From: Thalia democratica
Taxonomy: Eukaryota
Length of the DNA: 64,000 bases
NCBI GenBank assembly: GCA_965202585.1
Contig: OZ241831.1
Span: 49,910,001 to 49,974,000 of the forward strand
Direction: 5' to 3'
In this document: positions 2,438-64,000 of the stretch, one piece after another
Position numbering within the stretch: position 1 is the stretch's first letter
How the letters are laid out: the number at the start of each line of letters is the position of its first letter
Program-made: the position numbers and the translations under genes
The notes under the pieces: model-generated
The model's input: only the letters and a program-made list of their open reading frames with translations
Told to the model about the DNA's origin: nothing
Database searches by the model: none

Positions 2438-2443
2438 TTTTAT

Positions 2444-14730: not shown

Positions 14731-15899
14731 ATGAACGTCAAAGAAAACTGGAAGCTCTTCTCCAAATCGAACGAACGGACACAATCCAAAAAGTCTTCAG
14801 ATCCTTCCACGAACGAGGCATAGAAGAACTGTACGAAACAGTTGCAAAGTACTTCGAACTGGTGCTGAAAATTCACTCCGAAGTGCGAGCCAGCTCCGGA
14901 ACGATGAAATTTTACCTGGAGAAGCAGATGCGCGAAGTCATGTCTTCCCTGCAGGAATACTGCAACAGGATAAAATCTGTGAGGAGTTTCAGCGGGGTCA
15001 GCGTTACATTCGGTTTCGAGCAGTTTCGAGCGGAAGTCGACTTCGACTTCAGCGGCTGCGAGACTCTCATCTCGTCAGAAGATCTTCAAAAGATGCACGA
15101 GCTCAAGAACAGCGTCGACTCAGTTGAAATGAGTTTCACCGAAGGGAGTTTCTTCGACAAAGCGGCGTCCGGATTGGTTGAAATAGAGCGGGAGTGGGGC
15201 AGGCAACGGGCGTTCAAGAGGTACCTCGAGTCGCTGCTGGTTCAGTGCGAGAAACTGAACGACGTCAGAAAGCACCACGAAAAGTACATCGCCGAGCAGA
15301 AGAATTTCAAGCAGTTTTGCCGCGGCGTGGCGCTGAAGGAAGAGCACAATCGAATGCAGAAAGTCGCTTGGGAGTGGGTTTGCAGGAAGGAGGGGGAAGC
15401 CAAGCTGGAGAACGTGTTCATCGGGTACTTTTCGTTTTTTCGAAAAATTTTCTTCGTGCAGAGCAGCTTGAGAGAAGAAGACAGGATTGCGCCAAATGGT
15501 TGTTCTGTGCAGATCAACAACGGATTAAACGCGGCTACGGAAGCGTTCAAAAAGTTCAGTTCGGACAACGAGTTCTTTTTGAACAACGCCGCCATCAAGC
15601 CGAACTTTTTAGTGGACGAGCTGCTAGGTTATGAGATAAACGCCGGCAACGTACGCAACTTTTTCAACCACCGTGTGGCGCACGTGAGGAACTATTCACC
15701 CGACTACGAGTTCGACGTTCGAAACATGGTCCGTTTCGTCAACGGGGAGAGCAGAACGAAGTCCATGGTGCCTGAGGTGCAGCGAGTGAGCAGGAAGCTC
15801 GCTGCAGGTAACCACTGCAAAATTTGCTTGAGTGAAGCAGAACAGGAGTTGAACTTACTGAACAGCAAATACGACTTTGAAAACATTAAGTTGAATTAA
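14731..15899 (+). CDS. Progenitor ORF or terminal exon, unknown protein; needs one -1 frame correction near 14770-14778 for ~389 aa (track ORF 14862..15899, 345 aa)
   Basis: The frame ending at 15899 is open from 14730 with coding-like codon use. The ATG frame at 14731 (MNVKENWKLFSKSNE...) stops at 14821. From 15115 on it is homologous to every array unit. Confidence 0.75.
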
Positions 15900-16006
15900 A
15901 ACAATAACTTTCAAAGTTATTTTTATTTAATTAATAACTAAATTTCATCAATGATAAGCTAAGTAAGTATTTAGATTTTTGCAATAAGAACTTATCATGC
16001 GCCAAG

Positions 16007-17101
16007 GTGGCCAAGTCGCATTGTCTATTGATTTTATGTTGCTATAGAAATTCATTAGAACTCATAAGAAATCAATGCGTTTCGACACTGTTTCGAGGTC
16101 GTATGTTCATCGTTTTCATAAACGCCTCTTGTTTTCTTATCGAAGTAGCTATGCCGAAGCTAGTATATATACGCGTCAGTTCGGTTGGAAGTGTGAATTT
16201 GTGTGCAAAAAGTCCAGAGAAAGAGAGCTCATATATTCGAAAAGAAGAGAATTATGCAAATTTTCGGACACAATTTTTTAATGATTTTGAGTCTACACCT
16301 GAAAGAGTTAGTGAAATCGACTGCGCAGAAACGAGTTTCACCGAAGGGAGTTTCTTCGACAAAGCGGCGTCCGGATTGGTTGAAATAGAGCGGGAGTGGG
16401 GCAGGCGACGGGCGTTCAAGAGGTACCTCGAGTCGCTGCTGATCCAGTGCGAGAAACTGAACAACGTCAGAAAGCACCACGAGAAGTACATTGCCGAGCA
16501 GAAGAATTTCAAGCAGTTTTGCCGCGGCGTGGCGCTGAAGGAAGAGCACAATCGAATGCAGAAAAACGCTTGGGAGTGGGTTTGCAGGAAGGAGGGGGAA
16601 GCCAAGCTGGAGAACGTGTTCATCGGGTACTTTTCGTTTTTTCGAAAAATTTTCTTCGTGCAGAGCAGCTTGAGAGAAGAAGACAGGATCGCGCCCAATG
16701 GTTATTCTGTGCAGATCAACAACGAGTTAGACGCGGCTTCGGAAGCGTTTAAAAAGTTCAGTTCGGAAAACGAGTTCTTTTTAAACGACGCCGCCATCAA
16801 GCCGAACTTTTTAGTGGACGAGCTGCTGGGTTATGAGATAAACGCCGGCAACGTACGCAACTTTTTCAACCACCGTGTGGCGAACGTGAGCAACTATTCA
16901 CCCGACTACGAGTTCGACGTTCGAAACATGGTCCGTTTCGTCAACGGGGAGAGCAGAATGAAGTCCATGGTGCCTGAGGTGCAGCGGGTGAGCAGGAAGC
17001 TCGCTGCAGGTAACCACTGCAAAATTTGCTTGAGTGAAGCAGAACAGGAGTTGAATTTGCTGAACAGCAAATACGACTTTGAAAACATTAAGTTGAATTA
17101 A
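16007..17101 (+). CDS. Array unit U1, open from GTG 16007 / ATG 16103; first ATG out of frame (leader VNTR -17)
   Basis: ORF track 364 aa. Confidence 0.6.
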   Translation: MAKSHCLLILCCYRNSLELIRNQCVSTLFRGRMFIVFINASCFLIEVAMPKLVYIRVSSVGSVNLCAKSPEKESSYIRKEENYANFRTQFFNDFESTPERVSEIDCAETSFTEGSFFDKAASGLVEIEREWGRRRAFKRYLESLLIQCEKLNNVRKHHEKYIAEQKNFKQFCRGVALKEEHNRMQKNAWEWVCRKEGEAKLENVFIGYFSFFRKIFFVQSSLREEDRIAPNGYSVQINNELDAASEAFKKFSSENEFFLNDAAIKPNFLVDELLGYEINAGNVRNFFNHRVANVSNYSPDYEFDVRNMVRFVNGESRMKSMVPEVQRVSRKLAAGNHCKICLSEAEQELNLLNSKYDFENIKLN

Positions 17102-17198
17102 AACAATAACTTTCAAAGTTTTTTTTATTTAATTAATAACTAAATTTCATCAATGATAAGCTAAGTAAGTATTTAGATTTTTGCAATAAGAACTTATC

Positions 17199-18299
17199 AT
17201 GCGCAAAGTCGCCAAGTCGCATTGTCTATTGATTTTATGTTGCTATAGAAATTCATTAGAACTCATAAGAAATCAATGCGTTTCGACACTGTTTCGAGGT
17301 CGTATGTTCATCGTTTTCATAAACGCCTCTTGTTTTCTTATCGAAGTAGCTATGCCGAAGCTCGTATATATACGCGTCAGTTCGGTTGGAAGTGTGAATT
17401 TGTGTGCAAAAAGTCCAGAGAAAGAGAGCTCATATATTTGAAAAGAAGAGAATTATGCAAATTTTCGGACACAATTTTTTAATGATTTTGAGTCTACACC
17501 TGAAAGAGTTAGTGAAATCGACTCCGTTGAAACGAGTTTCATCGAAGGGAGTTTCTTCGACAAAGCGGCGTCCGGATTGGTTGAAATAGAGCGCGAATGG
17601 GGCACCTTCACGTTCAAGAGGCACCTCGAGTCGCTGCTGTTCCAGTGCGAGAAACTGAACAACGTCAGAAAGCACCACGGAAAGTACATCGCCGAGCAGA
17701 AAAAGTTCAAGCAGTTTTGCCGCGGCGTGGCGCTGAAGGGAGAGCACAATCGAATGCAGAAAGTCGCTTGGGAGTGGGTTTACAGGAAGGAGGGGGAAGC
17801 CAGGCTCGAGAACGTGTTCATCGGGTACTTTTCGTTTTTTCGAAAAATTTTCTTCGTGCAGAGCAGCTTGAGAGAAGAAGACAGGATTGCGCCCAATGGT
17901 TATTCTGTGAAGATCAACAACGAGTAGGACGCGGCTTCGGAAGCGTTTAAAAAGTTCAGTTCGGACAACGAGCTCTGTTTAAACGACGCCGCCATCAAGC
18001 CGAACTTTTTAGTGGACGAACTGCTGGGTTATGAGATAAACGCCGGCAACGTACGCAACTTTTTCAACCACCGTGTGGCGAACGTGAGCAACTATTCACC
18101 CGACTACGAGTTCGACGTTCGAAACATGGTCCGTTTCGTCAACGGGGAGAGCAGAATGAAGTCCATGGTGCCTGAGGTGCAGCGGGTGAGCAGGAAGCTC
18201 GCTGCAGGTAACCACTGCAAAATTTGCTTGAGTGAAGCAGAACAGGAGTTGAATTTGCTGAACAGCAAATACGACTTTGAAAACATTAAGTTAAATTAA
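17199..18299 (+). pseudogene. U2, divergent subfamily; TGA 17439, TAG 17925
   Basis: Three same-frame ORF fragments. Confidence 0.85.
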
Positions 18300-18396
18300 A
18301 ACAACAACTTTCAAAGTTTTTTTTATTTAATTATTAACTAATTTTCATCAATGATAAGCTAAGTAAGTATTTAGATTTTTGCAAAAAGAACTTATC

Positions 18397-19497
18397 ATGC
18401 GCAAAGTCGCCAAGTCGCATTGTCTATTGATTTTATGTTGCTATAGAAATTCATTAGAACTCATAAGAAATCAATGCGTTTCGACACTGTTTCGAGGTCG
18501 TATGTTCATCGTTTTCATAAACGCCTCTTATTTTCTTATCGAAGTAGCTATGCCGAAGCTCGTATATATACGCGTCAGTTCGGTTGGAAGTGTGAATTTG
18601 TGTGCAAAAAGTCCAGAGAAAGAGAGCTCATATATTTGAAAAGAAGAGAATTATGCAAATTTTCGGACACAATTTTTTAATGATTTTGAGTCTACACCTG
18701 AAAGAGTTAGTGAAATCGACTCCGTTGAAACGAGTTTCATCGAAGGGAGTTTCTTCGACAAAGCGGCGTCCGGATTGGTTGAAATAGAGCGCGAATGGGG
18801 CACCTTCACGTTCAAGAGGCACCTCGAGTCGCTGCTGTTCCAGTGCGAGAAACTGAACAACCTCAGAAAGCACCACGAAAAGTTTATCGCCGAGCAGAAA
18901 AAGTTCAAGCAGTTTTGCCGCGGCGTGGCGCTGAAGGGAGAGCACAATCGAATGCAGAAAGTCGCTTGGGAGTGGGTTTACAGGAAGGAGGGGGAAGCCA
19001 GGCTCGAGAACGTGTTCATCGGGTACTTTTCGTTTTTTCGAAAAATTTTCTTCGTGCAGAGCAGCTTGAGAGAAGAAGACAGGATTGCGCCCAACGGTTA
19101 TTCTGTGCAGATCAACAACGAGTTGGACGCGGCTTCGGAAGCGTTTAAAAAGTTCAGTTCGGACAACGAGCTCTGTTTAAACGACGCCGCCATCAAGCCG
19201 AACTTTTTAGTGGACGAACTGCTGGGTTATGAGATAAACGCCGGCAACATTTGCAACTTTTTCAACCACCGTGCGGCGCACGTGAGCAACTATTCACCCG
19301 ACTACGAGTTCGACGTTCGAAACATGGTCCGTTTCGTCAACGGGGAGAGCAGAATGAAGTCCATGGTGCCTGAGGTGCAGCGGGTGAGCAGGAAGCTCGC
19401 TGCAGGTAACCACTGCAAAATTTGCTTGAGTGAAGCAGAACGAGAGTTGAATTTACTGAACAGCAAATACGACTTTGAAAACATTAAGTTAAATTAA
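18397..19497 (+). pseudogene. U3, divergent subfamily; TGA 18637 in leader, core open
   Basis: CGA>TGA substitution. Confidence 0.8.
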
Positions 19498-19594
19498 AAC
19501 AACAACTTTCAAAGTTTTTTTTATTTAATTATTAACTAAATTTCATCAATGATAAGCTAAGTAAGTATTTAGATTTTTGCAATAAGAACTTATC

Positions 19595-20695
19595 ATGCGC
19601 AAAGTCGCCAAGTCGCATTGTCTATTGATTTTATGTTGCTATAGAAATTCATTAGAACTCATAAGAAATCAATGCGTTTCGACACTGTTTCGAGGTCGTA
19701 TGTTCATCGTTTTCATAAACGCCTCTTGTTTTCTTATCGAAGTAGCTATGCCGAAGCTCGTATATATACGCGTCAGTTCGGTTGGAAGTGTGAATTTGTG
19801 TGCAAAAAGTCCAGAGAAAGAGAGCTCATATATTTGAAAAGAAGAGAATTATGCAAATTTTCGGACACAATTTTTTAATGATTTTGAGTCTACACCTGAA
19901 AGAGTTAGTGAAATCGACTCCGTTGAAACGAGTTTCATCGAAGGGAGTTTCTTCGACAAAGCGGCGTCCGGATTGGTTGAAATAGAGCGCGAATGGGGCA
20001 CCTTCACGTTCAAGAGGCACCTCGAGTCGCTGCTGTTGCAGTGCGAGAAACTGAACAACCTCAGAAAGCACCACGGAAAGTACATCGCCGAGCAGAAAAA
20101 GTTCAAGCAGTTTTGCCGCGGCGTGGCGCTGAAGGGAGAGCACAATCGAATGCAGAAAGTCGCTTGGGAGTGGGTTTACAGGAAGGAGGGGGAAGCCAGG
20201 CTCGAGAACGTGTTCATCGGGTACTTTTCGTTTTTTCGAAAAATTTTCTTCGTGCAGAGCAGCTTGAGAGAAGAAGACAGGATTGCGCCCAATGGTTATT
20301 CTGTGCAGATCAACAACGAGTTGGACGCGGCTTCGGAAGCGTTTAAAAAGTTCAGTTCGGACAACGAGTTCTTTTTAAACGACGCCGCCATCAAGCCGAA
20401 CTTTTTAGTGGACGAACTGCTGGGTTTCGAGATAAACGCCGGCAACGTACGCAACTTTTTCAACCACCGTGTGGCGAACGTGAGCAACTATTCACCCGAC
20501 TACGAGTTCGACGTTCGAAACATGGTCCGTTTCGTCAACGGGGAGAGCAGAATGAAGTCCATGGTGCCTGAGGTGCAGCGGGTGAGCAGGAAGCTCGCTG
20601 CAGGTAACAACTGCAAAATTTGCTTGAGTGAAGCAGAGCAGGAGTTGAATTTGCTGAACAGCAAATACGACTTTGAAAACATTAAGTTGAATTAA
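19595..20695 (+). pseudogene. U4, divergent subfamily; TGA 19835 in leader, core open
   Basis: CGA>TGA substitution. Confidence 0.8.
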
Positions 20696-20792
20696 AACAA
20701 TAACTTTCAAAGTTTTTTTTATTTAATTAATAACTAAATTTCATCAATGATAAGCTAAGTAAGTATTTAGATTTTTGCAATAAGAACTTATC

Positions 20793-21911
20793 ATGCGCCA
20801 AGGTGGCCAAGTGCGCCAAGTCGCCAAGTCGCATTGTCTATTGATTTTATGTTGCTATAGAAATTCATTAGAACTCATAAGAAATCAATGCGTTTCGACA
20901 CTGTTTCGAGGTCGTATGTTCATCGTTTTCATAAACGCCTCTTGTTTTCTTATCGAAGTAGCTATGCCGAAGCTAGTATATATACGCGTCAGTTCGGTTG
21001 GAAGTGTGAATTTGTTTGCAAAAATTCCAGAGAAAGAGAGCTCATATATTCGAAAAGAAGAGAATTATGCAAATTTTCGGACACAATTTTTTAATGATTT
21101 TGAGTCTACACCTGAAAGAGTTAGTGAAATCGACTGCGCAGAAACGAGTTTCACCGAAGGGAGTTTCTTTGACAAAGCGGCGTCCGGATTGGTTGAAATA
21201 GAGCGGGAGTGGGGCAGGCAACGGGCGTTCAAGAGGTACCTCGAGTCGCTGCTGCTGCAGTGCGAGAGACTGAACAACGTCAGAAAGCACCACGAAAAGT
21301 ACATCGCCGAGCAGAAGAATTTCAAGCAATTTTGCCGCGGCGTGGCGCTGAAGGAAGAGCACAATCGAATGCGGAAAGTCGCTTGGGAGTGGGTTTACAG
21401 GAATGAGTTCTCCAAGCTGGAGAACGTGTTCATCGGGTACTTTTCGTTTTTTCGAAAAATTTTCCTCGTGCAGAGCAGCTTGAGAGAAGAAGACAGGATC
21501 GCGCCCAATGGTTATTCTGCGAAGATCAACAACGAGTTGGACGCGGCTTCGGAAGCGTTCAAAAAGTTCAGTTCGGACAACGAGTTCTTTTTAAACGACG
21601 CCGCCATCAAGTCGAACTTTTTAGTGGACGAACTGCTAGGTTATGAGATAAACGCCGGCAACGTACGCAACTTTTTCAACCACCGTGTGGCGAACGTGAG
21701 CAACTATTCACCCGACTACGAGTTCGACGTTCGAAACATGGTCCGTTTCGTCAACGGGGAGAGCAGAATGAAGTCCATGGTGCCTGAGGTGCAGCGAGTG
21801 AGCAGGAAGCTCGCTGCAGGTAACCACTGCAAAATTTGCTTGAGTGAAGCAGAACAGGAGTTGAACTTACTGAACAGCAAATACGACTTTGAAAACATTA
21901 AGTTGAATTAA
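20793..21911 (+). CDS. U5, intact 372 aa (RNEFSKLE replaces RKEGEAKLE)
   Basis: Open from ATG to stop. Confidence 0.7.
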   Translation: MRQGGQVRQVAKSHCLLILCCYRNSLELIRNQCVSTLFRGRMFIVFINASCFLIEVAMPKLVYIRVSSVGSVNLFAKIPEKESSYIRKEENYANFRTQFFNDFESTPERVSEIDCAETSFTEGSFFDKAASGLVEIEREWGRQRAFKRYLESLLLQCERLNNVRKHHEKYIAEQKNFKQFCRGVALKEEHNRMRKVAWEWVYRNEFSKLENVFIGYFSFFRKIFLVQSSLREEDRIAPNGYSAKINNELDAASEAFKKFSSDNEFFLNDAAIKSNFLVDELLGYEINAGNVRNFFNHRVANVSNYSPDYEFDVRNMVRFVNGESRMKSMVPEVQRVSRKLAAGNHCKICLSEAEQELNLLNSKYDFENIKLN

Positions 21912-22018
21912 AACAATAACTTTCAAAGTTATTTTTATTTAATTAATAACTAAATTTCATCAATGATAAGCTAAGTAAGTATTTAGATTTTCGCAATAAG
22001 AACTTATCATGCGCCAAG

Positions 22019-23113
22019 GTGGCCAAGTCGCATTGTCTATTGATTTTATGTTGCTATAGAAATTCATTAGAACTCATAAGAAATCAATGCGTTTCGACAC
22101 TGTTTCGAGGTCGTATGTTCATCGTTTTCATAAACGCCTCTTGTTTTCTTATCGAAGTAGCTATGCCGAAGCTAGTATATATACGCGTCAGTTCGGTTGG
22201 AAGTGTGAATTTGTGTGCAAAAAGTCCAGAGAAAGAGAGCTCATATATTCGAAAAGAAGAGAATTATGCAAATTTTCGGACACAATTTTTTAATGATTTT
22301 GAGTCTACACCTGAAAGAGTTAGTGAAATCGACTGCGCAGAAACGAGTTTCACCGAAGGGAGTTTCTTCGACAAAGCGGCGTCCGGATTGGTTGAAATAG
22401 AGCGGGAGTGGGGCAGGCGACGGGCGTTCAAGAGGTACCTCGAGTCGCTGCTGATCCAGTGCGAGAAACTGAACAACGTCAGAAAGCACCACGAGAAGTA
22501 CATTGCCGAGCAGAAGAATTTCAAGCAGTTTTGCCGCGGCGTGGCGCTGAAGGAAGAGCACAATCGAATGCAGAAAAACGCTTGGGAGTGGGTTTGCAGG
22601 AAGGAGGGGGAAGCCAAGCTGGAGAACGTGTTCATCGGGTACTTTTCGTTTTTTCGAAAAATTTTCTTCGTGCAGAGCAGCTTGAGAGAAGAAGACAGGA
22701 TCGCGCCCAATGGTTATTCTGTGCAGATCAACAACGAGTTAGACGCGGCTTCGGAAGCGTTTAAAAAGTTCAGTTCGGAAAACGAGTTCTTTTTAAACCA
22801 CGCCGCCATCAAGCCGAACTTTTTAGTGGACGAGCTGCTGGGTTATGAGATAAACGCCGGCAACGTACGCAACTTTTTCAACCACCGTATGGCGAACGTG
22901 AGCAACTATTCACCCGACTACGAGTTCGACGTTCGAAACATGGTCCGTTTCGTCAACGGGGAGAGCAGAATGAAGTCCATGGTGCCTGAGGTGCAGCGGG
23001 TGAGCAGGAAGCTCGCTGCAGGTAACCACTGCAAAATTTGCTTGAGTGAAGCAGAACAGGAGTTGAATTTGCTGAACAGCAAATACGACTTTGAAAACAT
23101 TAAGTTGAATTAA
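22019..23113 (+). CDS. U6, near-copy of U1
   Basis: ORF track 364 aa. Confidence 0.6.
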   Translation: MAKSHCLLILCCYRNSLELIRNQCVSTLFRGRMFIVFINASCFLIEVAMPKLVYIRVSSVGSVNLCAKSPEKESSYIRKEENYANFRTQFFNDFESTPERVSEIDCAETSFTEGSFFDKAASGLVEIEREWGRRRAFKRYLESLLIQCEKLNNVRKHHEKYIAEQKNFKQFCRGVALKEEHNRMQKNAWEWVCRKEGEAKLENVFIGYFSFFRKIFFVQSSLREEDRIAPNGYSVQINNELDAASEAFKKFSSENEFFLNHAAIKPNFLVDELLGYEINAGNVRNFFNHRMANVSNYSPDYEFDVRNMVRFVNGESRMKSMVPEVQRVSRKLAAGNHCKICLSEAEQELNLLNSKYDFENIKLN

Positions 23114-23210
23114 AACAATAACTTTCAAAGTTTTTTTTATTTAATTAATAACTAAATTTCATCAATGATAAGCTAAGTAAGTATTTAGATTTTTGCAATA
23201 AGAACTTATC

Positions 23211-24311: not shown

Positions 24312-24418
24312 AACAATAACTTTCAAAGTTATTTTTATTTAATTAATAACTAAATTTCATCAATGATAAGCTAAGTAAGTATTTAGATTTTCGCAATAAG
24401 AACTTATCATGCGCCAAG

Positions 24419-25513: not shown

Positions 25514-25611
25514 AACAATAACTTTCAAAGTTTTTTTTTATTTAATTAATAACTAAATTTCATCAATGATAAGCTAAGTAAGTATTTAGATTTTTGCAAT
25601 AAGAACTTATC

Positions 25612-53547: not shown

Positions 53548-53645
53548 AACAACAACTTTCAAAGTTTTTTTTTATTTAATTAATAACTAAATTTCATCAA
53601 TGATAAGCTAAGTAAGTATTTAGATTTTTGCAATAAGAACTTATC

Positions 53646-54766: not shown

Positions 54767-54864
54767 AACAACAACTTTCAAAGTTTTTTTTTATTTAATT
54801 AATAACTAAATTTCATCAATGATAAGCTAAGTAAGTATTTAGATTTTTGCAATAAGAACTTATC

Positions 54865-55985
54865 ATGCGCCAAGGTGGCCAAGTGCGCCAAGTCGCCAAG
54901 TCGCATTGTCTATTGATTTTATGTTGCTATAGAAATTCATTAGAACTCATAAGAAATCAATGCGTTTCGACACTGTTTTGAGGTCGTATGTTCATCGTTT
55001 TCATAAACGCCTCTTGTTTTCTTATCGAAGTAGCTATGCCGAAGCTCGTATATATACGCGTCAGTTCGGTTGGAAGTGTGAATTTGTGTGCAAAAATTCC
55101 AGAGAAAGAGAGCTCATATATTCGAAAAGAAGAGAATTATGCAAATTTTCGGACACAATTTTTGAATGATTTTGAGTCTACACCTGAAAGAGTTAGTGAA
55201 ATCGACTGCGCAGAAACGAGTTTCACCGAAGGGAGTTTCTTCGACAAAGCGGCGTCCGGATTGGTTGAAATAGAGCGGGAGTGGGGCAGGCGACGGGCGT
55301 TCAAGAGGTACCTCGAGTCGCTGCTGGTTCAGTGCGAGAATCTGAACAACGTCAGAAAGCACCACGAAAAGTACATTGCTGAGCAAAAGAATTTCAAGCA
55401 GTTTTGCCGCGGCGTGGCGCTGAAGGAAGAGCACAATCGAATGCAGAAAGTCGCTTGGGAGTGGGTTTGCAGGAAGGAGGGGGAAGCAAAGTTGGAAAAC
55501 GTGTTCATCGGGTACTTTTCGTTTTTCGAAAAATTTTCTTTGTGCAGAGCAGCTTGAGAGAAAAAGACAGGATCGCGCCCAATGGTTATTCTGTGCAGAT
55601 CAACAACGAGTTAGACGCGGCTTCGGAAGCGTTCAAAAAGTTCAGTTCGGACAACGAGTTCTTTTTAAACGACGCCGCCATCAAGCCGAACTTTTTAGTG
55701 GACGAACTGCTAGGTTACGAGATAAACGCCGGCAACATCTGCAATTTTCTCAACCACCGTGTGGCGAACGTGAGCAACTATTCGCCCGACTACGAGTTCG
55801 ACGTTCGGAACATGGTCCGTTTCGTCAACGGGGAGAGCGGAATGAAGTCCATGGTGCCTGAGGTGCAGCGGGTGAGCAGGAAGCTCACTGCAGGTAACCA
55901 CTGCAAAATTTGCTTGAGTGAAGCAGAACAGGAGTTGAACTTGCTGAACAGCAAATACGACTTTGAAAACATTAAGTTGAATTAA
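54865..55985 (+). pseudogene. U33, type P
   Basis: Same lesions as U24. Confidence 0.85.
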
Positions 55986-56082
55986 AACAATAACTTTCAA
56001 AGTTTTTTTTATTTAATTAATAACTAAATTTCATCAATGATAAGCTAAGTAAGTATTTAGATTTTTGCAATAAGAACTTATC

Positions 56083-57204
56083 ATGCGCCAAGGTGGCCAA
56101 GTGCGCCAAGTCGCCAAGTCGCATTGTCTATTGATTTTATGTTGCTATAGAAATTCATTAGAACTCATAAGAAATCAATGCGTTTCGACACTGTTTCGAG
56201 GTCGTATGTTCATCGTTTTCATAAACGCCTCTTGTTTTCTTATCGAAGTAGCTATGCCGAAGCTCGTATATATACGCGTCAGTTCGGTTAGAAGTGTGAA
56301 TTTGTGTGCAAAAATTCCAGAGAAAGAGAGCTCATATATTCGAAAAGAAGAGAATTATGCAAATTTTCGGACACAATTTTTGAATGATTTTGAGTCTTCA
56401 CCTGAAAGAGTTAGTGAAATCGACTGCGCAGAAACGAGTTTCACCGAAGGGAGTTTCTTCGACAAAGCGGCGTCCGGATTGGTTGAAATAGAGCGGGAGT
56501 GGGGCAGGCGACGGGCGTTCAAGAGGCACCTCGAGTCGCTGCTGGTTCAGTGCGAGAATCTGAACAACGTCAGAAAGCACCACGAAAAGTACATTGCTGA
56601 GCAAAAGAATTTCAAGCAGTTTTGCCGCGGCGTGGCGCTGAAGGAAGAGCACAATCGAATGCAGAAAGTCGCTTGGGAGTGGGTTTGCAGGAAGGAGGGG
56701 GAAGCAAAGTTGGAAAACGTGTTCATCGGGTACTTTTCGTTTTTTCGAAAAATTTTCCTCGTGCAAAGCAGCTTGAGAGAAGAAGACAGGATCGCGCCAA
56801 ATGGTTGTTCTGCGAAGATCAACAACGAGTTGGACGCGGCTTCGGAAGCGTTTAAAAAGTTCAGTTCGGACAACGAGTTCTTTTTGAACAACGCCGCCAT
56901 CAAGCCGAACTTTTTAGTGGACGAGCTGCTGGGTTATGAGATAAACGCCGGCAACGTACGCAACTTTTTCAACCACCGTGTGGCGTACGTGAGCAACTAT
57001 TCACCCGACTACGAGTTCGACGTTCGAAACATGGTCCGTTTCGTCAACGGGGAGAGCGGAACGAAGTCCATGGTGCCTGAGGTGCAGCGGGTGAGCAGGA
57101 AGCTCACTGCAGGTAACCACTGCAAAATTTGCTTGAGTGAAGCAGAACGGGAGTTGAACTTGCTGAACAGCAAATACGACTTTGAAAACTTTAAGTTGAA
57201 TTAA
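56083..57204 (+). CDS. U34, intact 373 aa, near-copy of U22
   Basis: Shares RSV, ENFKLN and other diagnostic variants with U22. Confidence 0.7.
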   Translation: MRQGGQVRQVAKSHCLLILCCYRNSLELIRNQCVSTLFRGRMFIVFINASCFLIEVAMPKLVYIRVSSVRSVNLCAKIPEKESSYIRKEENYANFRTQFLNDFESSPERVSEIDCAETSFTEGSFFDKAASGLVEIEREWGRRRAFKRHLESLLVQCENLNNVRKHHEKYIAEQKNFKQFCRGVALKEEHNRMQKVAWEWVCRKEGEAKLENVFIGYFSFFRKIFLVQSSLREEDRIAPNGCSAKINNELDAASEAFKKFSSDNEFFLNNAAIKPNFLVDELLGYEINAGNVRNFFNHRVAYVSNYSPDYEFDVRNMVRFVNGESGTKSMVPEVQRVSRKLTAGNHCKICLSEAERELNLLNSKYDFENFKLN

Positions 57205-57302
57205 AACAATAACTTTCAAAGTTTTTTTTTATTTAATTAATAACTAAATTTCATCAATGATAAGCTAAGTAAGTATTTAGATTTTTGCAATAAGAACTTA
57301 TC

Positions 57303-58420
57303 ATGCGCCAAGGTGGCCAAGTGCGCCAAGTCGCCAAGTCGCATTGTCTATTGATTTTATGTTGCTATAGAAATTCATTAGAACTCATAAGAAATCAATG
57401 CGTTTCGACACTGTTTCGAGGTCGTATGTTCATCGTTTTCATAAACGCCTCTTGTTTTCTTATCGAAGTAGCTATGCCGAAGCTAGTATATATACGCGTC
57501 AGTTCGGTTGGAAGTGTGAATTTGTGTGCAAAAAGTCCAGAGAAAGAGAGCTCATATATTCGAAAAGAAGAGAATTATGCAAATTTTCGGACACAATTTT
57601 TTAATGATTTTGAGTCTACACCTGAAAGAGTTAGTGAAATCGACTGAAAACGAGTTTCACCGAAGGGAGTTTCTTCGACAAAGCGGCGTCCGGATTGGTT
57701 GAAATAGAGCGGGAGTGGGGCAGGCGACGGGCGTTCAAAAGGTACCTCGAGTCGCTGCTGATCCGGTGCGAGAAACTGAACAACGTCAGAAAGCACCACG
57801 AAAAGTACATTGCCGAGCAGAAGAATTTCAAGCAGTTTTGCCGCGGCGTGGCGCTGAAGGAAGAGCACAATCGAATGCAGAAAGTCGCTTGGGAGTGGGT
57901 TTACAGGAAGGAGGGGGAAGCCAAGCTGGAGAACGTGTTCATCGGGTACTTTTCGTTTTTTCGAAAAATTTTCTTCGTGCACAGCAGCTTGAGAGAAGAA
58001 GACAGGATCGCGCCAAATGGTTATTCTGTGCAGATCAACAACGAGTTAGACGCGGCTTCGGAAGCGTTTAAAAAGTTCAGTTCGGACAACGACTTCTTTT
58101 TAAACAACGCCGCCATCAAGCCGAACTTTTTAGTGGACGAACTGCTAGGTTATGAGATAAACGCCGGCAACGTACGCAACTTTTTCAACCACCGTGTGGC
58201 GAACGTGAGCAACTATTCACCCGACTACGAGTTCGACGTTCGAAACATGGTCCGTTTCGTCAACGGGGAGAGCGGAATGAAACTCATGGTGCCTGAGGTG
58301 CAGCGAGTGAGCAGGAAGCTCGCTGCAGGTAACAACTGCAAAATTTGCTTGAGTGAAGCAGAACGGGAGTTGAACTTGCTGAACAGCAAATACGACTTTG
58401 AAAACATTAAGTTGAATTAA
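57303..58420 (+). pseudogene. U35, same 4-nt junction deletion as U23
   Basis: ORF stops at 57647. Confidence 0.8.
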
Positions 58421-58527
58421 AACAATAACTTTCAAAGTTTTTTTTATTTAATTAATAACTAAATTTCATCAATGATAAGCTAAGTAAGTATTTAGATTTT
58501 TGCAATAAGAACTTATCATGCGCCAAG

Positions 58528-59631
58528 GTGGCCAAGTGCGCCAAGTCGCATTGTCTATTGATTTTATGTTGCTATAGAAATTCATTAGAACTCATAAGAA
58601 ATCAATGCGTTTCGACACTGTTTCGAGGTCGTATGTTCATCGTTTTCATAAACGCCTCTTGTTTTCTTATCGAAGTAGCTATGCCGAAGCTCGTATATAT
58701 ACGCGTCAGTTCGGTTGGAAGTGTGAATTTGTGTGCAAAAAGTCCAGAGAAAGAGAGCTCATATATTCGAAAAGAAGAGAATTATGCAAATTTTCGGACA
58801 CAATTTTTTAATGATTTTGAGTCTACACCTGAAAGAGTTAGTGAAATCGACTGCGCAGAAATGAGTTTCACCGAAGGGAGTTTCTTCGACAAAGCGGCGT
58901 CCGGATTGGTTGAAATAGAGCGCGAGTGGGGCAGGCGACGGGCGTTCAAGAGGTACCTCGAGTCGCTGCTGGACCAGTGCAAGAAACTGAGCAACGTCAG
59001 AAAGCACCACGAAAAGTACGTTGCCGAGCAGAAAAAGTTCAAGCAATTTTGCCGCGGCGTGGCGCTGAAGGAAGAGCACAATCGAATGCAGAAAGTCGCT
59101 TGGGAGTGGGTTTACAGGAAGGAGGGGGAAGCCAAGCTGGAGAACGTGTTCATCGGGAACTTTTCGTTTTTTCGAAAAATTTTCTTCGTGCACAGCAGCT
59201 TGAGAGAAGAAGACAGGATCGCGCCAAATGGTTGTTCTGCGAAGATCAACAACGAGTTAGACGCGGCTTCGGAAGCGTTTAAAAAGTTCAGTTCGGACAA
59301 CGAGTTCTTTTTAAACAACGCCGCCATCAAGCCGAACTTTTTAGTGGACGACCTGCTAGGTTATGAGATAAACGCCGGCAACGTACGCAACTTTTTCAAC
59401 CACCGTGTGGCGAACGTGAGCAACTATTCGCCCGACTACGAGTTCGACGTTCGAAACATGGTCCGTTTCGTCAACGGGGAGAGCAGAATGAAGTCCATGG
59501 TGCCTGAGGTGCAGCGGGTGAGCAGGAAGCTCGCTGCAGGTAACAACTGCAAAATTTGCTTGAGTGAAGCAGAACGAGAGTTGAATTTGCTGAACAACAA
59601 ATACGACTTTGAAAACATTAAGTTGAATTAA
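58528..59631 (+). CDS. U36, unique variant, open from GTG or internal ATG; first ATG 58518 out of frame (VNTR -8)
   Basis: ORF track 367 aa. Confidence 0.55.
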   Translation: MAKCAKSHCLLILCCYRNSLELIRNQCVSTLFRGRMFIVFINASCFLIEVAMPKLVYIRVSSVGSVNLCAKSPEKESSYIRKEENYANFRTQFFNDFESTPERVSEIDCAEMSFTEGSFFDKAASGLVEIEREWGRRRAFKRYLESLLDQCKKLSNVRKHHEKYVAEQKKFKQFCRGVALKEEHNRMQKVAWEWVYRKEGEAKLENVFIGNFSFFRKIFFVHSSLREEDRIAPNGCSAKINNELDAASEAFKKFSSDNEFFLNNAAIKPNFLVDDLLGYEINAGNVRNFFNHRVANVSNYSPDYEFDVRNMVRFVNGESRMKSMVPEVQRVSRKLAAGNNCKICLSEAERELNLLNNKYDFENIKLN

Positions 59632-59728
59632 AACAATAACTTTCAAAGTTTTTTTTATTTAATTAATAACTAAATTTCATCAATGATAAGCTAAGTAAGT
59701 ATTTAGATTTTTGCAATAAGAACTTATC

Positions 59729-60849
59729 ATGCGCCAAGGTGGCCAAGTGCGCCAAGTCGCCAAGTCGCATTGTCTATTGATTTTATGTTGCTATAGAAAT
59801 TCATTAGAACTCATAAGAAATCAATGCGTTTCGACACTGTTTCGAGGTCGTATGTTCATCGTTTTCATAAACGCCTCTTGTTTTCTTATCGAAGTAGCTA
59901 TGCCGAAGCTAGTATATATACGCGTCAGTTCGGTTGGAAGTGTGAATTTGTGTGCAAAAAGTCCAGAGGAAGAGAGCCCATATATTCGAAAAGAAGAGAA
60001 TTATGCAAATTTTCGGACACAATTTTTGAATGATTTTGAGTCTTCACCTGAAAGAGTTAGTGAAATCGACTGCGCAGAAACGAGTTTCACCGAAGGGAGT
60101 TTCTTCGACAAAGCGGCGTCCGGATTGGTTGAAATAGAGCGGGAGTGGGGCAGGCGACGGGCGTTCAAGAGGTACCTCGAGTCGCTGCTGATCCGGTGCG
60201 AGAAACTGAACAACGTCAGAAAGCACCACGAAAAGTACATCGCCGAGCAGAAGAATTTCAAGCAATTTTGCCGCGGCGTGGCGCTGAAGGAAGAGCACAA
60301 TCGAATGCAGAAAGTCGCTTGGGAGTGGGTTTACAGGAAGGAGGGGAAGAAAAGCTGGAGAACGTGTTCATCGGGTACTTTTCGTTTTTTCGAAAAATTT
60401 TCTTCGTGCAGAGCAGCTTGAGAGAAGAAGACAGGATCGCGCCCAATGGTTATTCTGTGCAGATCAACAACGAGTTGGACGCGGCTTCGGAAGCGTTCAA
60501 AAAGTTCAGTTCGGACAACGAGTTCTTTTTGAACAACGCCGCCATCAAGCCGAACTTTTTAGTGGACGACCTGCTAGGTTATGAGATAAACGCCGGCAAC
60601 GTACGCAACTTTTTCAACCACCGTGTGGCGAACGTGAGCAACTATTCGCCCGACTACGAGTTCGACGTTCGAAACATGGTCCGTTTCGTCAACGGGGAGA
60701 GCAGAATGAAGTCCATGGTGCCTGAGGTGCAGCGGGTGAGCAGGAAGCTCGCTGCAGGTAACAACTGCAAAATTTGCTTGAGTGAAGCAGAACGAGAGTT
60801 GAATTTGCTGAACAACAAATACGACTTTGAAAACATTAAGTTGAATTAA
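59729..60849 (+). pseudogene. U37, -1 frameshift near 60347 (ggggaagaaaag)
   Basis: Split 230 + 234 aa ORFs. Confidence 0.8.
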
Positions 60850-60946
60850 AACAATAACTTTCAAAGTTTTTTTTATTTAATTAATAACTAAATTTCATCA
60901 ATGATAAGCTAAGTAAGTATTTAGATTTTTGCAATAAGAACTTATC

Positions 60947-62067
60947 ATGCGCCAAGGTGGCCAAGTGCGCCAAGTCGCCAAGTCGCATTGTCTATTGATT
61001 TTATGTTGCTATAGAAATTCATTAGAACTCATAAGAAATCAATGCGTTTCGACACTGTTTCGAGGTCGTATGTTCATCGTTTTCATAAACGCCTCTTGTT
61101 TTCTTATCGAAGTAGCTATGCCGAAGCTAGTATATATACGCGTCAGTTCGGTTGGAAGTGTGAATTTGTGTGCAAAAAGTCCAGAGGAAGAGAGCCCATA
61201 TATTCGAAAAGAAGAGAATTATGCAAATTTTCGGACACAATTTTTGAATGATTTTGAGTCTTCACCTGAAAGAGTTAGTGAAATCGACTGCGCAGAAACG
61301 AGTTTCACCGAAGGGAGTTTCTTCGACAAAGCGGCGTCCGGATTGGTTGAAATAGAGCGGGAGTGGGGCAGGCGACGGGCGTTCAAGAGGTACCTCGAGT
61401 CGCTGCTGATCCGGTGCGAGAAACTGAACAACGTCAGAAAGCACCACGAAAAGTACATCGCCGAGCAGAAGAATTTCAAGCAATTTTGCCGCGGCGTGGC
61501 GCTGAAGGAAGAGCACAATCGAATGCAGAAAGTCGCTTGGGAGTGGGTTTACAGGAAGGAGGGGAAGAAAAGCTGGAGAACGTGTTCATCGGGTACTTTT
61601 CGTTTTTTCGAAAAATTTTCTTCGTGCAGAGCAGCTTGAGAGAAGAAGACAGGATCGCGCCCAATGGTTATTCTGTGCAGATCAACAACGAGTTGGACGC
61701 GGCTTCGGAAGCGTTCAAAAAGTTCAGTTCGGACAACGAGTTCTTTTTGAACAACGCCGCCATCAAGCCGAACTTTTTAGTGGACGACCTGCTAGGTTAT
61801 GAGATAAACGCCGGCAACGTACGCAACTTTTTCAACCACCGTGTGGCGAACGTGAGCAACTATTCGCCCGACTACGAGTTCGACGTTCGAAACATGGTCC
61901 GTTTCGTCAACGGGGAGAGCAGAATGAAGTCCATGGTGCCTGAGGTGCAGCGGGTGAGCAGGAAGCTCGCTGCAGGTAACAACTGCAAAATTTGCTTGAG
62001 TGAAGCAGAACGAGAGTTGAATTTGCTGAACAACAAATACGACTTTGAAAACATTAAGTTGAATTAA
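60947..62067 (+). pseudogene. U38, copy of U37
   Basis: Same lesion. Confidence 0.8.
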
Positions 62068-62164
62068 AACAATAACTTTCAAAGTTTTTTTTATTTAATT
62101 AATAACTAAATTTCATCAATGATAAGCTAAGTAAGTATTTAGATTTTTGCAATAAGAACTTATC

Positions 62165-63285
62165 ATGCGCCAAGGTGGCCAAGTGCGCCAAGTCGCCAAG
62201 TCGCATTGTCTATTGATTTTATGTTGCTATAGAAATTCATTAGAACTCATAAGAAATCAATGCGTTTCGACACTGTTTCGAGGTCGTATGTTCATCGTTT
62301 TCATAAACGCCTCTTGTTTTCTTATCGAAGTAGCTATGCCGAAGCTAGTATATATACGCGTCAGTTCGGTTGGAAGTGTGAATTTGTGTGCAAAAAGTCC
62401 AGAGGAAGAGAGCCCATATATTCGAAAAGAAGAGAATTATGCAAATTTTCGGACACAATTTTTGAATGATTTTGAGTCTTCACCTGAAAGAGTTAGTGAA
62501 ATCGACTGCGCAGAAACGAGTTTCACCGAAGGGAGTTTCTTCGACAAAGCGGCGTCCGGATTGGTTGAAATAGAGCGGGAGTGGGGCAGGCGACGGGCGT
62601 TCAAGAGGTACCTCGAGTCGCTGCTGATCCGGTGCGAGAAACTGAACAACGTCAGAAAGCACCACGAAAAGTACATCGCCGAGCAGAAGAATTTCAAGCA
62701 ATTTTGCCGCGGCGTGGCGCTGAAGGAAGAGCACAATCGAATGCAGAAAGTCGCTTGGGAGTGGGTTTACAGGAAGGAGGGGAAGAAAAGCTGGAGAACG
62801 TGTTCATCGGGTACTTTTCGTTTTTTCGAAAAATTTTCTTCGTGCAGAGCAGCTTGAGAGAAGAAGACAGGATCGCGCCCAATGGTTATTCTGTGCAGAT
62901 CAACAACGAGTTGGACGCGGCTTCGGAAGCGTTCAAAAAGTTCAGTTCGGACAACGAGTTCTTTTTGAACAACGCCGCCATCAAGCCGAACTTTTTAGTG
63001 GACGACCTGCTAGGTTATGAGATAAACGCCGGCAACGTACGCAACTTTTTCAACCACCGTGTGGCGAACGTGAGCAACTATTCGCCCGACTACGAGTTCG
63101 ACGTTCGAAACATGGTCCGTTTCGTCAACGGGGAGAGCAGAATGAAGTCCATGGTGCCTGAGGTGCAGCGGGTGAGCAGGAAGCTCGCTGCAGGTAACAA
63201 CTGCAAAATTTGCTTGAGTGAAGCAGAACGAGAGTTGAATTTGCTGAACAACAAATACGACTTTGAAAACATTAAGTTGAATTAA
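62165..63285 (+). pseudogene. U39, copy of U37
   Basis: Same lesion. Confidence 0.8.
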
Positions 63286-63382
63286 AACAATAACTTTCAA
63301 AGTTTTTTTTATTTAATTAATAACTAAATTTCATCAATGATAAGCTAAGTAAGTATTTAGATTTTTGCAATAAGAACTTATC

Positions 63383-64000
63383 ATGCGCCAAGGTGGCCAA
63401 GTGCGCCAAGTCGCCAAGTCGCATTGTCTATTGATTTTATGTTGCTATAGAAATTCATTAGAACTCATAAGAAATCAATGCGTTTCGACACTGTTTCGAG
63501 GTCGTATGTTCATCGTTTTCATAAACGCCTCTTGTTTTCTTATCGAAGTAGCTATGCCGAAGCTAGTATATATACGCGTCAGTTCGGTTGGAAGTGTGAA
63601 TTTGTGTGCAAAAAGTCCAGAGGAAGAGAGCCCATATATTCGAAAAGAAGAGAATTATGCAAATTTTCGGACACAATTTTTGAATGATTTTGAGTCTTCA
63701 CCTGAAAGAGTTAGTGAAATCGACTGCGCAGAAACGAGTTTCACCGAAGGGAGTTTCTTCGACAAAGCGGCGTCCGGATTGGTTGAAATAGAGCGGGAGT
63801 GGGGCAGGCGACGGGCGTTCAAGAGGTACCTCGAGTCGCTGCTGATCCGGTGCGAGAAACTGAACAACGTCAGAAAGCACCACGAAAAGTACATCGCCGA
63901 GCAGAAGAATTTTAAGCAGTTTTGCCGCGGCGTGGCGCTGAAGGAAGAGCACAATCGAATGCAGAAAGTCGCTTGGGAGTGGGTTTACAGGAAGGAGGGG
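63383..64000 (+). other. U40, partial unit cut by the window end (U37-like)
   Basis: Open as far as visible. The window ends just before the U37 lesion site. Confidence 0.85.

What the first reader, a model, noticed from the sequence alone, without database searches (positions are those of the whole stretch)
15240..63900. Hypervariable codons in otherwise homogenised copies: a cassette-like repertoire
Seen: the two codons after ESLL (15240-15245 in the progenitor) occur as at least 12 haplotypes: gtt-cag, atc-cat, atc-cag, ttc-cag, ttg-cag, ctg-cag, gtg-aag, gtc-cat, atc-caa, atc-cgg, gtg-cag, gac-cag. Long flanking stretches are invariant. Other multi-allelic sites: 15459 (Q/R/L/H), 15501-15512 (C/Y/N, S/F, V/A, Q/K), 15675-15689 (V/A/M; H/N/Y), 15813 (H/N/K). 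These alleles recur in shuffled combinations between units, and the leader looks less variable than the core. Inference: diversifying selection plus gene conversion, as in antigen-variation cassettes, allorecognition or effector genes, or drive/suppressor arrays. This is my best candidate for an undescribed system in this window.
Basis: partly seen in the sequence, partly recalled or inferred. Interest (0 to 1): 0.8.

Follow-up and report, generated by a model that had tools for sequence, protein, structure and literature searches.

The report
Decaying array of RING-less gene fragments
About forty head-to-tail 1.2-kb copies of the middle of a ubiquitin-ligase-type (RING) gene fill this window; their shuffled variants are real and two adjacent codons are unusually variable, but the copies change like unconstrained DNA, so this is a gene-derived satellite and not a diversity-generating cassette system.

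Summary
The two codons after ESLL show 12 six-base haplotypes in the window and 18 among 119 units over 264 kb. They are the two most variable codons of the repeat (scan P about 0.002-0.004). The other multi-allelic sites, the shuffling and the quieter leader are also real.

Each unit is a 446-nt non-homologous leader plus residues about 131-391 of an intronless, lineage-restricted family of about 490 aa with a C-terminal RING-H2. The units lack that RING. Recombination or conversion is strongly indicated: at least 43-61 events, and linkage is gone beyond about 10-30 nt.

Diversifying selection is not indicated:
- Rare variants are neutral: pN/pS about 1.1, with stop codons at the expected rate.
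- Common variants carry a purifying signature (pN/pS 0.29), and 38 of 44 are shared with full-length paralogs.
- 51 of 119 cores are broken.
- Outside the one hotspot, site variability fits a uniform neutral model.
- The core's extra variation is old and transition-rich. Recent differences hit leader and core equally.

The hotspot is specific to the array and unexplained. I favour a local mutational cause. Expression is unresolved. Two earlier follow-ups of this scan, on neighbouring windows of the same locus, reached the same "decaying array" verdict.

The parts
1..613 (+). Tail of an upstream array of the same units, ending at unit position 646. It carries the atc-cat haplotype at 528-533.
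   Evidence: 99.2% identity to unit positions 34-646. The same truncation point, about 646-649, ends the other arrays.
614..14294 (.). AT-rich spacer (23-33% GC) between two arrays.
   Evidence: Composition profile. No homology to the unit. Spacers of 13-14 kb recur between arrays.
14731..15899 (+). It holds the family's own ATG, the N-terminal part and the core. It ends in IKLN-stop where the family continues to the RING. A 1-nt deletion in codon 5 breaks its frame.
   Evidence: 90.7% identity to the marine metagenome contig L002 from 436 nt upstream of the ATG to family residue about 387. Frameshift shown in the alignment. Frames shown.
15240..15245 (+). The two hypervariable codons (core codons 39-40, gtt-cag here). 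They correspond to residues 171-172 of the full-length paralog L003.
15900..63285 (+). 39 complete 1198-1220-nt units, head to tail, with two-unit higher-order repeats and runs of near-identical units.
   Evidence: 93-98% identity to the reference unit. Variant matrix.
63286..64000 (+). Start of unit 40. The array runs on to contig position 49,978,802, which is 4.8 kb past the window end.
25514..25959 (+). Leader of the reference unit: 97 nt of AT-rich sequence, then 349 nt with a TATA-like tatatata at about unit position 270. Homology with the family begins about 20 nt before the core. The leader's open frame is not constrained.
   Evidence: No match in paralog flanks or spacers. DNA alignment. 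Leader-frame variants are 54 nonsynonymous, 15 synonymous and 9 stop, against an expected 56.6, 17.7 and 3.7.
25960..26733 (+). Core of the reference unit: 257 codons plus a stop, homologous to family residues about 131-391. No RING.
26074..26079 (+). Hotspot codons in the reference unit (gtt-cag).
   Evidence: anchor at 26062, plus 12.

Best explanation
The region is a gene-derived macrosatellite.

Origin (inferred from anatomy). An intronless gene for a protein of about 490 aa with a C-terminal RING-H2 finger suffered an internal tandem duplication of its middle part (residues about 131-391), with 446 nt of unrelated filler, the 'leader', at the junction. Unequal crossing-over then expanded leader+core units. 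The result is arrays of the form N-terminus+core, then (leader+core) many times, then leader+core+RING. Larger segmental duplications copied whole arrays together with their 13-14 kb spacers.

Present state (shown). The units evolve as unconstrained DNA. New mutations hit leader and core equally. They are nonsynonymous, synonymous and nonsense in neutral proportions, and over 40% of cores are broken.

Source of the shuffled alleles (inferred). The recurrent, shuffled alleles are older, transition-rich variation that was already filtered by selection. The cores share it with full-length paralogs, either inherited from them or exchanged with them. Many short conversion or recombination events have reassorted it until linkage is almost gone.

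The hotspot (inferred). The two hypervariable codons are a real hotspot specific to the array. I think it most likely reflects local hypermutability, at about 55% of the weight given to hotspot explanations. The six bases lie directly after a (CTG)2 repeat. Codon 39 would be the 3-nt loop, and codon 40 part of the stem, of a short CTG/CAG quasi-palindrome. Codon 39 is an NTN codon, where first- and third-position changes only swap hydrophobic residues.
For: Anatomy:
- Unit map.
- The family has a C-terminal RING-H2: zf-RING_2 at 4.8e-11 in P0001.
- Intact full-length paralogs L003 and L004 lie 40-100 kb upstream.
- The terminal copy L011 reads leader+core+RING, open for 470 aa.

Neutral evolution of the units:
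- Core variants are 229 nonsynonymous, 106 synonymous and 11 stop, against 246, 86.6 and 13.3 expected.
- Variants in 4 or fewer units are 162, 53 and 9, giving pN/pS about 1.08 with stops as expected.
- Only 68 of 119 cores are open and 47 of 119 whole ORFs are intact.
- Deletion events are as dense in the core as in the leader.

Old variation in the core:
- Variants in 15 or more units are 20 nonsynonymous, 24 synonymous and 0 stop, with 36 transitions to 8 transversions. 38 of 44 are shared with paralogs.
- Paralog omega is 0.16-0.48.
- Singleton density is 9.6 per 100 nt in the leader and 11.2 in the core.
- Differences between nearest-neighbour units fall on core and leader at a per-site ratio of 0.92.

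Reassortment: Rm is 43-61 and r2 falls to about 0.04 beyond 10 nt.

Hotspot:
- P = 0.002-0.004.
- It is not exceptional among non-array paralogs.
- The third position of codon 39 has three alleles, including synonymous ones.
- The fold places codon 39 in the loop.
Against: - The hairpin is weak: dG -3.7 kcal/mol, z -0.6, no better than shuffles. The hypermutability mechanism is therefore conjecture.
- Among near-identical unit pairs only one pair differs in the hotspot, by three changes at once. There is no sign of a fast ongoing process.
- No conversion tracts matching any named paralog were found. Import from paralogs is inferred from allele sharing and spectra only.
- A pN/pS of about 1 could hide a mixture of positive and negative selection.
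- Singletons and 1-nt indels may include assembly errors, a caveat raised for long-read assemblies in PMC8794474. However, the class found in 2-4 units gives the same neutral picture.
- 68 open cores, a TATA-like element and two small metatranscriptome contigs leave room for some expressed copies.
Confidence: 0.7

Rival explanations
1. The units encode expressed RING-less proteins that act as decoys or dominant negatives of the parental E3 ligase. Codons 39, 40 and 43 would be a contact patch under diversifying selection in an arms race, with conversion spreading new alleles.
For: - The hotspot is statistically real and specific to the array.
- Positions 39, 40 and 43 have i, i+1, i+4 spacing on a predicted long helix.
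- 68 of 119 cores are open.
- Rare variants in open units have pN/pS 1.3.
- Each unit carries a TATA-like element.
Against: - The pN/pS of 1.3 is not significant (P = 0.35).
- Stops and frameshifts accumulate at neutral rates.
- Hotspot alleles are in neutral nonsynonymous-to-synonymous proportion, with a tri-allelic synonymous position.
- Most amino-acid diversity there is conservative: I/V in 106 of 119 units and Q/R in 114 of 119.
- After the TATA-like element no in-frame ATG occurs before core codon 76 (read). The upstream ATG frame shows no constraint.
- RNA evidence is two contigs at depth about 2 in metatranscriptomes that may hold DNA.
- The model is of low confidence at the site (pLDDT about 50).
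Confidence: 0.1
2. The array is a silent donor reservoir. Short-tract conversion from the RING-less units into the flanking intact RING genes (the terminal leader+core+RING copies and L003/L004) diversifies the functional ligases in the germline. This is the closest workable version of the reader's cassette idea.
For: - The architecture puts many promoter-doubtful, partly broken copies next to intact genes.
- Conversion appears pervasive and short-tract.
- 19-20 of the 24 differences between L003 or L004 and the array consensus are alleles that segregate in the array. I estimate about 5 expected by chance.
Against: - Variation is not organised into variable regions between conserved blocks.
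- Common variants are selection-filtered, not diversified (pN/pS 0.29).
- The direction of exchange cannot be told from the data, and no tracts were detected.
- The intact paralogs evolve under purifying selection (omega 0.3-0.4).
- The hotspot window is unremarkable among the paralogs.
Confidence: 0.08
3. The array works at the RNA level as a source of small RNAs that silence the parental RING genes, like a Su(Ste)-type suppressor. Protein coding would then be irrelevant and the hotspot incidental.
For: - Neutral protein evolution with high copy number.
- The intact paralogs L003 and L004 lie nearby on the opposite strand.
- The precedent of Ste/Su(Ste), as summarised in PMC8794474.
Against: - All units in 264 kb lie on one strand, with no inverted copies or hairpin arrangement.
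- No small-RNA data could be examined.
- RNA contigs are negligible.
Confidence: 0.07
4. The shuffling and the hotspot are assembly or polishing artefacts of a collapsed repeat.
For: - Repeats that are 97% identical are hard to assemble.
- Singletons and 1-nt indels are typical long-read errors (caveat in PMC8794474).
Against: - Haplotypes recur in orderly two-unit higher-order repeats.
- The rare GAC (Asp) haplotype also occurs in an independent metagenome scaffold (P0002/L001).
- Many marine metagenomes hold the unit.
- Variants shared by 2-4 units, and by more, give the same picture as singletons.
Confidence: 0.05

Closest known systems
ORF-bearing macrosatellites: human RS447/USP17, D4Z4/DUX4, TAF11-like (PMC5687341)
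   Same: Kilobase-sized units sit head to tail in tens to hundreds of copies. Each unit carries an ORF derived from a gene and its own putative promoter. RS447 is also a ubiquitin-system gene.
   Different: The units here hold only an internal fragment of the parent gene, without its catalytic RING. Over 40% of them are broken, and no expression was shown. RS447 units encode a complete, functional enzyme.
Ampliconic multi-copy families with concerted evolution: Drosophila Stellate/Su(Ste), CK2-beta-tes-Y, Lhk (PMC8794474)
   Same: Lineage-restricted amplification of a chimeric gene copy, many pseudogenised members, and frequent gene conversion inferred from four-gamete tests.
   Different: Those families show positive selection and testis expression, and in D. 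melanogaster a small-RNA suppressor role. Here the tests give neutrality, sex linkage is unknown and expression is unresolved.
Segmental gene-conversion cassette systems: Borrelia vlsE with silent vls cassettes, trypanosome VSG pseudogene arrays, chicken Ig pseudo-V genes (from general knowledge, not checked in papers here)
   Same: A contiguous array of truncated, partly defective copies lies next to intact genes. Short-tract exchange produces mosaics.
   Different: Those systems have discrete variable regions with an excess of amino-acid change, and one expression site that is rewritten. Here variation is spread uniformly and neutrally apart from one 6-nt spot, and nothing shows directed transfer.
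RING-H2 E3 ubiquitin ligases (Pfam zf-RING_2, PF13639)
   Same: The parental family (P0001, L003, L004, L006, L010, L011) has a C-terminal RING-H2 domain.
   Different: The array units stop about 100 residues before the RING. The helical N-terminal and core region has no Pfam family, and only three non-RING relatives were found among 1.84 billion representatives.

Membership tests
Gene-derived macrosatellite / decaying ampliconic array | Head-to-tail units of 1 kb or more in tens to hundreds of copies | tested here: met
   39 full units in the window and 119 in 264 kb. 160 exact matches of the anchor pattern in the genome.
Gene-derived macrosatellite / decaying ampliconic array | The unit derives from a recognisable parent gene | tested here: met
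   The core equals residues about 131-391 of the RING-H2 family, about 97% identical at DNA level to L003 and L004.
Gene-derived macrosatellite / decaying ampliconic array | Copies evolve without protein-level constraint | tested here: met
   Rare variants have pN/pS about 1.08 with stops at the expected rate. 51 of 119 cores are broken. Core deletions are as dense as leader deletions.
Gene-derived macrosatellite / decaying ampliconic array | Unequal crossing-over or conversion signatures: higher-order repeats and mosaics | tested here: met
   Two-unit higher-order repeats and identical runs. Rm 43-61.
Antigenic-variation-type cassette repertoire | Variation concentrated in discrete variable regions between conserved blocks | tested here: not met
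   Only one 6-nt window exceeds the neutral model (P = 0.002). The counts of codons with at least 4 or at least 5 amino acids fit it (P = 0.15 and 0.08).
Antigenic-variation-type cassette repertoire | Excess of amino-acid-changing over silent variation in the variable parts | tested here: not met
   pN/pS is 0.76 overall and 0.29 for common variants. The hotspot holds about 8-9 nonsynonymous and 2-3 synonymous alleles, the neutral proportion.
Antigenic-variation-type cassette repertoire | Segmental (short-tract) gene conversion among copies | tested here: met
   Four-gamete failures between sites 2-3 nt apart, also for transversions. r2 is about 0.04 beyond 10 nt. Conversion is inferred from these data, not observed directly.
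Antigenic-variation-type cassette repertoire | One expression site rewritten from silent donors, with expressed mosaics absent from the germline | not testable with these tools
   Only two metatranscriptome contigs at depth about 2 touch the unit. No species-specific cDNA was available.
RING-H2 E3 ubiquitin ligase | Presence of the RING-H2 zinc finger | tested here: not met
   No Pfam hit in the unit ORF or the first copy. The alignment shows the units end at IKLN-stop before the RING. The RING is present only in full-length paralogs and in the terminal copies.
Stellate/Su(Ste)-like drive or suppressor array | Germline transcripts or small RNAs from the array that target a homologous gene | not testable with these tools
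   No small-RNA or gonad RNA data could be reached. All units lie on one strand.

The most novel reading that the evidence does not exclude
The hotspot would mark a site-specific process acting on the array DNA itself. One possibility is a hairpin-loop-directed deaminase, or slippage at the (CTG)2-NNN-CAG quasi-palindrome. Another is escape from a sequence-specific factor. At the same time, pervasive short-tract conversion would let the RING-less units serve as a germline donor pool that feeds variation into the flanking intact RING-H2 ligase genes. That would be an animal germline analogue of pseudogene-templated diversification.
Probability: 0.08. Interest if true: 0.65.

Novelty: new member of a known kind. 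Interest (0 to 1): 0.3.

Why it matters
The main value is negative. A striking "hypervariable codons in homogenised copies" pattern turns out to be neutral decay plus reassortment, so it should not be promoted as a new immune-type or drive-type system.

Three points keep some interest:
- Linkage between variants is erased within about 10-30 nt across more than 100 copies. This makes the locus a natural record of very short-tract ectopic exchange in a marine animal.
- The contrast between a single-origin leader and a core that shares old variation with paralogs gives an internal clock. It separates new mutation from inherited or imported variation.
- One 6-nt spot is several times more allele-rich than any other, only inside the array. 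This is a candidate local mutational hotspot that population long-read data could test.

Tried and rejected
Searches that gave nothing useful:
- Pfam on the unit ORF and the first copy: no significant family.
- Rfam on the whole window: no match.
- Tandem Repeats Finder cannot see the 1.2-kb period. It found only a 75-nt repeat at 2398-2629.

Structure:
- AlphaFold2 of the full-length paralog with an 11-sequence alignment reached only pLDDT 61.7 and pTM 0.48.
- Foldseek against the AlphaFold clusters found only RING proteins at TM of 0.24 or less, apart from the RING itself.
- Variable sites therefore could not be mapped to a surface. I can only say that the hotspot lies near the start of a long predicted helix.

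The leader:
- Its origin was not found in paralog flanks, spacers or other fetched loci.
- A weak peptide similarity to the parental N-terminus (E = 0.009) did not hold at DNA level beyond about 20 nt.
- Its ORF was considered as real coding sequence and rejected: variants in its frame are neutral, with 9 stop variants.

Other hypotheses tested and rejected:
- CpG hypermutability as the cause of the core's excess variation: transitions are in excess at all site classes.
- Leader constraint as the cause of its low diversity: singleton density and recent pairwise differences are equal in leader and core.
- Long conversion tracts from named paralogs: none are longer than in shuffled data, except a marginal one for the first copy (P about 0.02).

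Expression: two RNA-library contigs at depth about 2 are not evidence of transcription, because DNA of a repeat with over 100 copies can contaminate such libraries.

Limits:
The arrays beyond contig position 50,174,000 and the region of L003 and L004 were seen only through short loci.
- HyPhy (GARD, MEME, FUBAR) and GENECONV are not installed. I used variant counts by frequency class, a neutral simulation, four-gamete and r2 statistics, and a run-length test instead.


Full report
WHAT IS IN THE WINDOW

The window is contig C7:49,910,001-49,974,000 of an 802-Mb eukaryotic assembly. Spacers have 23-33% GC and the repeated part about 44%.

BLAST of one unit against the window finds 39 complete units of 1198-1220 nt lying head to tail from 15900 to 63285, and a partial 40th to the window end. 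A "first copy" has its last 774 nt (15126-15899) matching unit positions 447-1220. Window 1-613 is the tail of another array that stops at unit position 646.

I added the next 200 kb of the contig. The window's array then ends 4.8 kb past the window, again at unit position 646. A 13.3-kb spacer follows, then a second array of about 72 units. Smaller arrays with the same ends lie further on. This gives 119 full units in 264 kb. A pattern search finds 160 exact copies of the anchor motif in the whole genome.

WHAT THE UNIT IS

The first copy's product finds four relatives among 5.8 billion proteins. The full-length ones (P0001, P0003, P0004) end in a RING-H2 finger, with zf-RING_2 at E = 4.8e-11 to 1e-9. 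P0001 is encoded without introns on a Tara Oceans metagenome scaffold. That scaffold matches the window at 90.7% from 436 nt upstream of the ATG to family residue about 387 and no further.

The genome itself holds intact full-length paralogs of 489-491 aa. L003 and L004 lie 40-100 kb upstream on the minus strand. L006 lies 18 Mb away. Terminal array copies read leader+core+RING with open frames of 470-476 aa (L011 and L010).

Each unit is therefore a 446-nt leader with no homology to the family, except about the last 20 nt, followed by family residues about 131-391. It ends in IKLN-stop about 100 residues before the RING. The arrangement is N-terminus+core, then (leader+core) repeated, then leader+core+RING. 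This is what an internal tandem duplication with filler DNA at the junction, followed by unequal crossing-over, would leave. That origin is an inference.

The window's own first copy has a 1-nt deletion in codon 5, so the "progenitor" is itself frameshifted. Its counterpart before the upstream array (L005) is intact.

The non-RING part is lineage-restricted. An exhaustive HMMER search of 1.84 billion representatives finds only P0004, P0005 (27% identity) and P0006 outside the RING.

All 12 haplotypes of the two codons after ESLL are present. With 119 units there are 18, and one more in the genome-wide pattern search.

These are the two most variable codons of the 257-codon core:
- Codon 39 has 11 codons and 5 amino acids: I 61, V 45, L 7, F 5, D 1.
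- Codon 40 has 6 codons and 5 amino acids: Q 75, R 39, K 2, H 2, P 1.
- Codon 43, one helical turn on, also has 5 amino acids.

Eleven of the 18 possible variant alleles occur in the six bases. The permutation scan gives P = 0.004. A simulation using observed site-class rates gives P = 0.002. The rare Asp haplotype also occurs in an independent metagenome scaffold, so it is not an assembly error.

The other multi-allelic sites are as described. The leader is three times less diverse than the core, 0.014 against 0.043.

Alleles are strongly reassorted. The Hudson-Kaplan minimum is 61 events, or 43 on the 103 unique units. Four-gamete failures occur between sites 2-3 nt apart and among transversion-only sites. 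Mean r2 is 0.14 within 10 nt and about 0.04 beyond.

THE SELECTION READING FAILS

I counted each variant allele once, which is robust to recombination, against a neutral expectation from the consensus with the observed transition bias.

| Variant class | Nonsynonymous | Synonymous | Stop | pN/pS |
|---|---|---|---|---|
| All core variants, observed | 229 | 106 | 11 | 0.76 |
| All core variants, neutral expectation | 246 | 86.6 | 13.3 | 1 (by definition) |
| In 4 or fewer units | 162 | 53 | 9 (8.6 expected) | about 1.08 |
| In 15 or more units | 20 | 24 | 0 | 0.29 |

The value of 0.29 for common variants matches the omega of 0.16-0.48 between functional paralogs. 38 of these 44 common variants are alleles also found in paralogs.

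Further points:
- 61 of 119 cores are unaltered in length and open, and 7 more are open with in-frame deletions. The other 51 have frameshifts or premature stops.
- Only 47 whole 373-aa ORFs survive.
- Deletion events are as dense in the core as in the leader.
- Rare variants confined to open units give pN/pS 1.3, not different from 1 (P = 0.35). This does not differ from the value in broken units (Fisher P = 0.11).
- The numbers of codons with at least 4 or at least 5 amino acids fit the uniform neutral simulation (P = 0.15 and 0.08).

WHY THE CORE IS MORE VARIABLE THAN THE LEADER

It is not leader constraint. Singleton density is 9.6 per 100 nt in the leader and 11.2 in the core. Differences between nearest-neighbour units fall on core and leader at a per-site ratio of 0.92. 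Variants in the leader's open frame are neutral, with 9 stop variants against 3.7 expected.

It is not CpG decay alone either. Transitions are in excess in the core at CpG, non-CpG G/C and A/T sites alike.

The excess lies entirely in intermediate- and high-frequency variants: 2.1, 2.8 and 6.3 times the leader's density, rising with frequency class. These are transition-rich, 36 to 8 in the top class.

The leader arose once, with the first junction. Variation older than that can sit only in the core. The simplest reading is that the cores carry variation inherited from, or exchanged with, family members that were under purifying selection. L003 and L004 differ from the array consensus at 24 sites each, and 19-20 of those alleles segregate in the array.

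This is inference. A run-length test found no tracts matching any named paralog beyond chance, apart from a marginal case for the first copy.

THE HOTSPOT

It is specific to the array. Among the non-array paralogs the same window is unremarkable; 180-252 of 766 windows are at least as variable.

Its alleles are in neutral nonsynonymous-to-synonymous proportion. The third position of codon 39 has three alleles (GTT, GTG and GTC all encode V). First and third positions of this NTN codon occur in nearly all combinations, which needs recurrent change within 3 nt. At the protein level 106 of 119 units have I or V and 114 of 119 have Q or R.

The six bases follow a (CTG)2 repeat. With the downstream CAG they form a short quasi-palindrome whose 3-nt loop is codon 39. 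The fold is weak, at -3.7 kcal/mol and z -0.6. The GTTCAG haplotype also forms a perfect 7-bp inverted repeat with ACTGAAC 7 nt downstream, at -5.1 kcal/mol and z -1.0.

Only one near-identical unit pair differs at the hotspot, by three changes within four bases. This looks like a multi-nucleotide event or a micro-conversion.

I therefore favour a local mutational cause (slippage or hairpin context, multi-nucleotide events) at a position that tolerates change. I cannot show it. Selection on a contact patch of an expressed decoy protein remains possible at about 10%.

STRUCTURE AND EXPRESSION

The AlphaFold2 model of full-length L003 is mostly helical and of low confidence (pLDDT 61.7). Residues 171-172, which are codons 39-40, lie near the start of helix 159-217 at pLDDT about 50. 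Fold search recognises only the RING. Burial or exposure of variable sites cannot be judged.

The unit is present in many marine metagenomes and in runs of three coded organisms. Only two short contigs at depth about 2 in metatranscriptome libraries touch it. For a repeat with over 100 copies this can be carried-over DNA.

After the TATA-like element at about unit position 270 there is no in-frame ATG until core codon 76. This is read from the translation.

COMPARISON AND VERDICT

The locus behaves like an ORF-bearing macrosatellite (RS447/USP17, D4Z4/DUX4; PMC5687341). It also resembles ampliconic families that include many pseudogenes and show frequent conversion (PMC8794474). It differs in that its units are RING-less internal fragments evolving neutrally.

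It shares with cassette systems only the short-tract exchange and the neighbourhood of intact genes. It fails the tests for variable-region architecture and for an excess of amino-acid change.

Two earlier follow-ups of this scan on neighbouring windows (s1-271225, s1-271238) reached the same "decaying array of truncated RING gene" verdict. My tests were made independently on this window plus 200 kb, and they agree.

Noticed in passing
window 1589-2640: A GC-richer island lies in the AT-rich spacer. It ends in a perfect palindrome of about 114 nt (2324-2437) and three 75-nt repeats, each a GC hairpin followed by a T-run (2398-2629, TRF score 420). No Rfam family matches and there is no long conserved ORF. 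Other first-stage notes flag similar 'bacterial-style' cassettes elsewhere in this genome.
   Followed up: partly
window 14300-14350: A short stretch just upstream of the first copy has contig depth of about 58,000-83,000 in two organism runs, against about 220-400 for the neighbouring single-copy sequence. Many contigs run on from it into T-rich sequence. It is probably a very abundant short interspersed repeat.
   Followed up: no
window 14745 (codon 5 of the first copy): A 1-nt deletion relative to L005, L003 and the Tara contig frameshifts the window's first copy. The equivalent copy before the upstream array (L005, C7:49906361) has an intact 391-aa ORF for N-terminus+core without a RING.
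   Followed up: yes
window 1-613 and 14295-15899; contig C7 49.90-50.23 Mb: Whole arrays are themselves duplicated. Several arrays end at the same unit position (about 646-649). Each is followed by a 13-34 kb gap and then a new N-terminus+core copy, which points to segmental duplication of array-plus-spacer blocks.
   Followed up: partly
core codons 231 and 234 (window 15816-15827 in the first copy); L003 residues C363 and C366: A CxxC pair is invariant across the whole family, including the 27-33% identical relatives P0005 and P0006. It lies far from the RING and may be an extra zinc-binding or structural motif of the orphan helical domain.
   Followed up: no
units at window 43794-55985 and 59632-64000: Two different 1-nt deletions are each shared by a run of seven or more units. 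Disabled units have therefore been re-amplified after they broke.
   Followed up: yes
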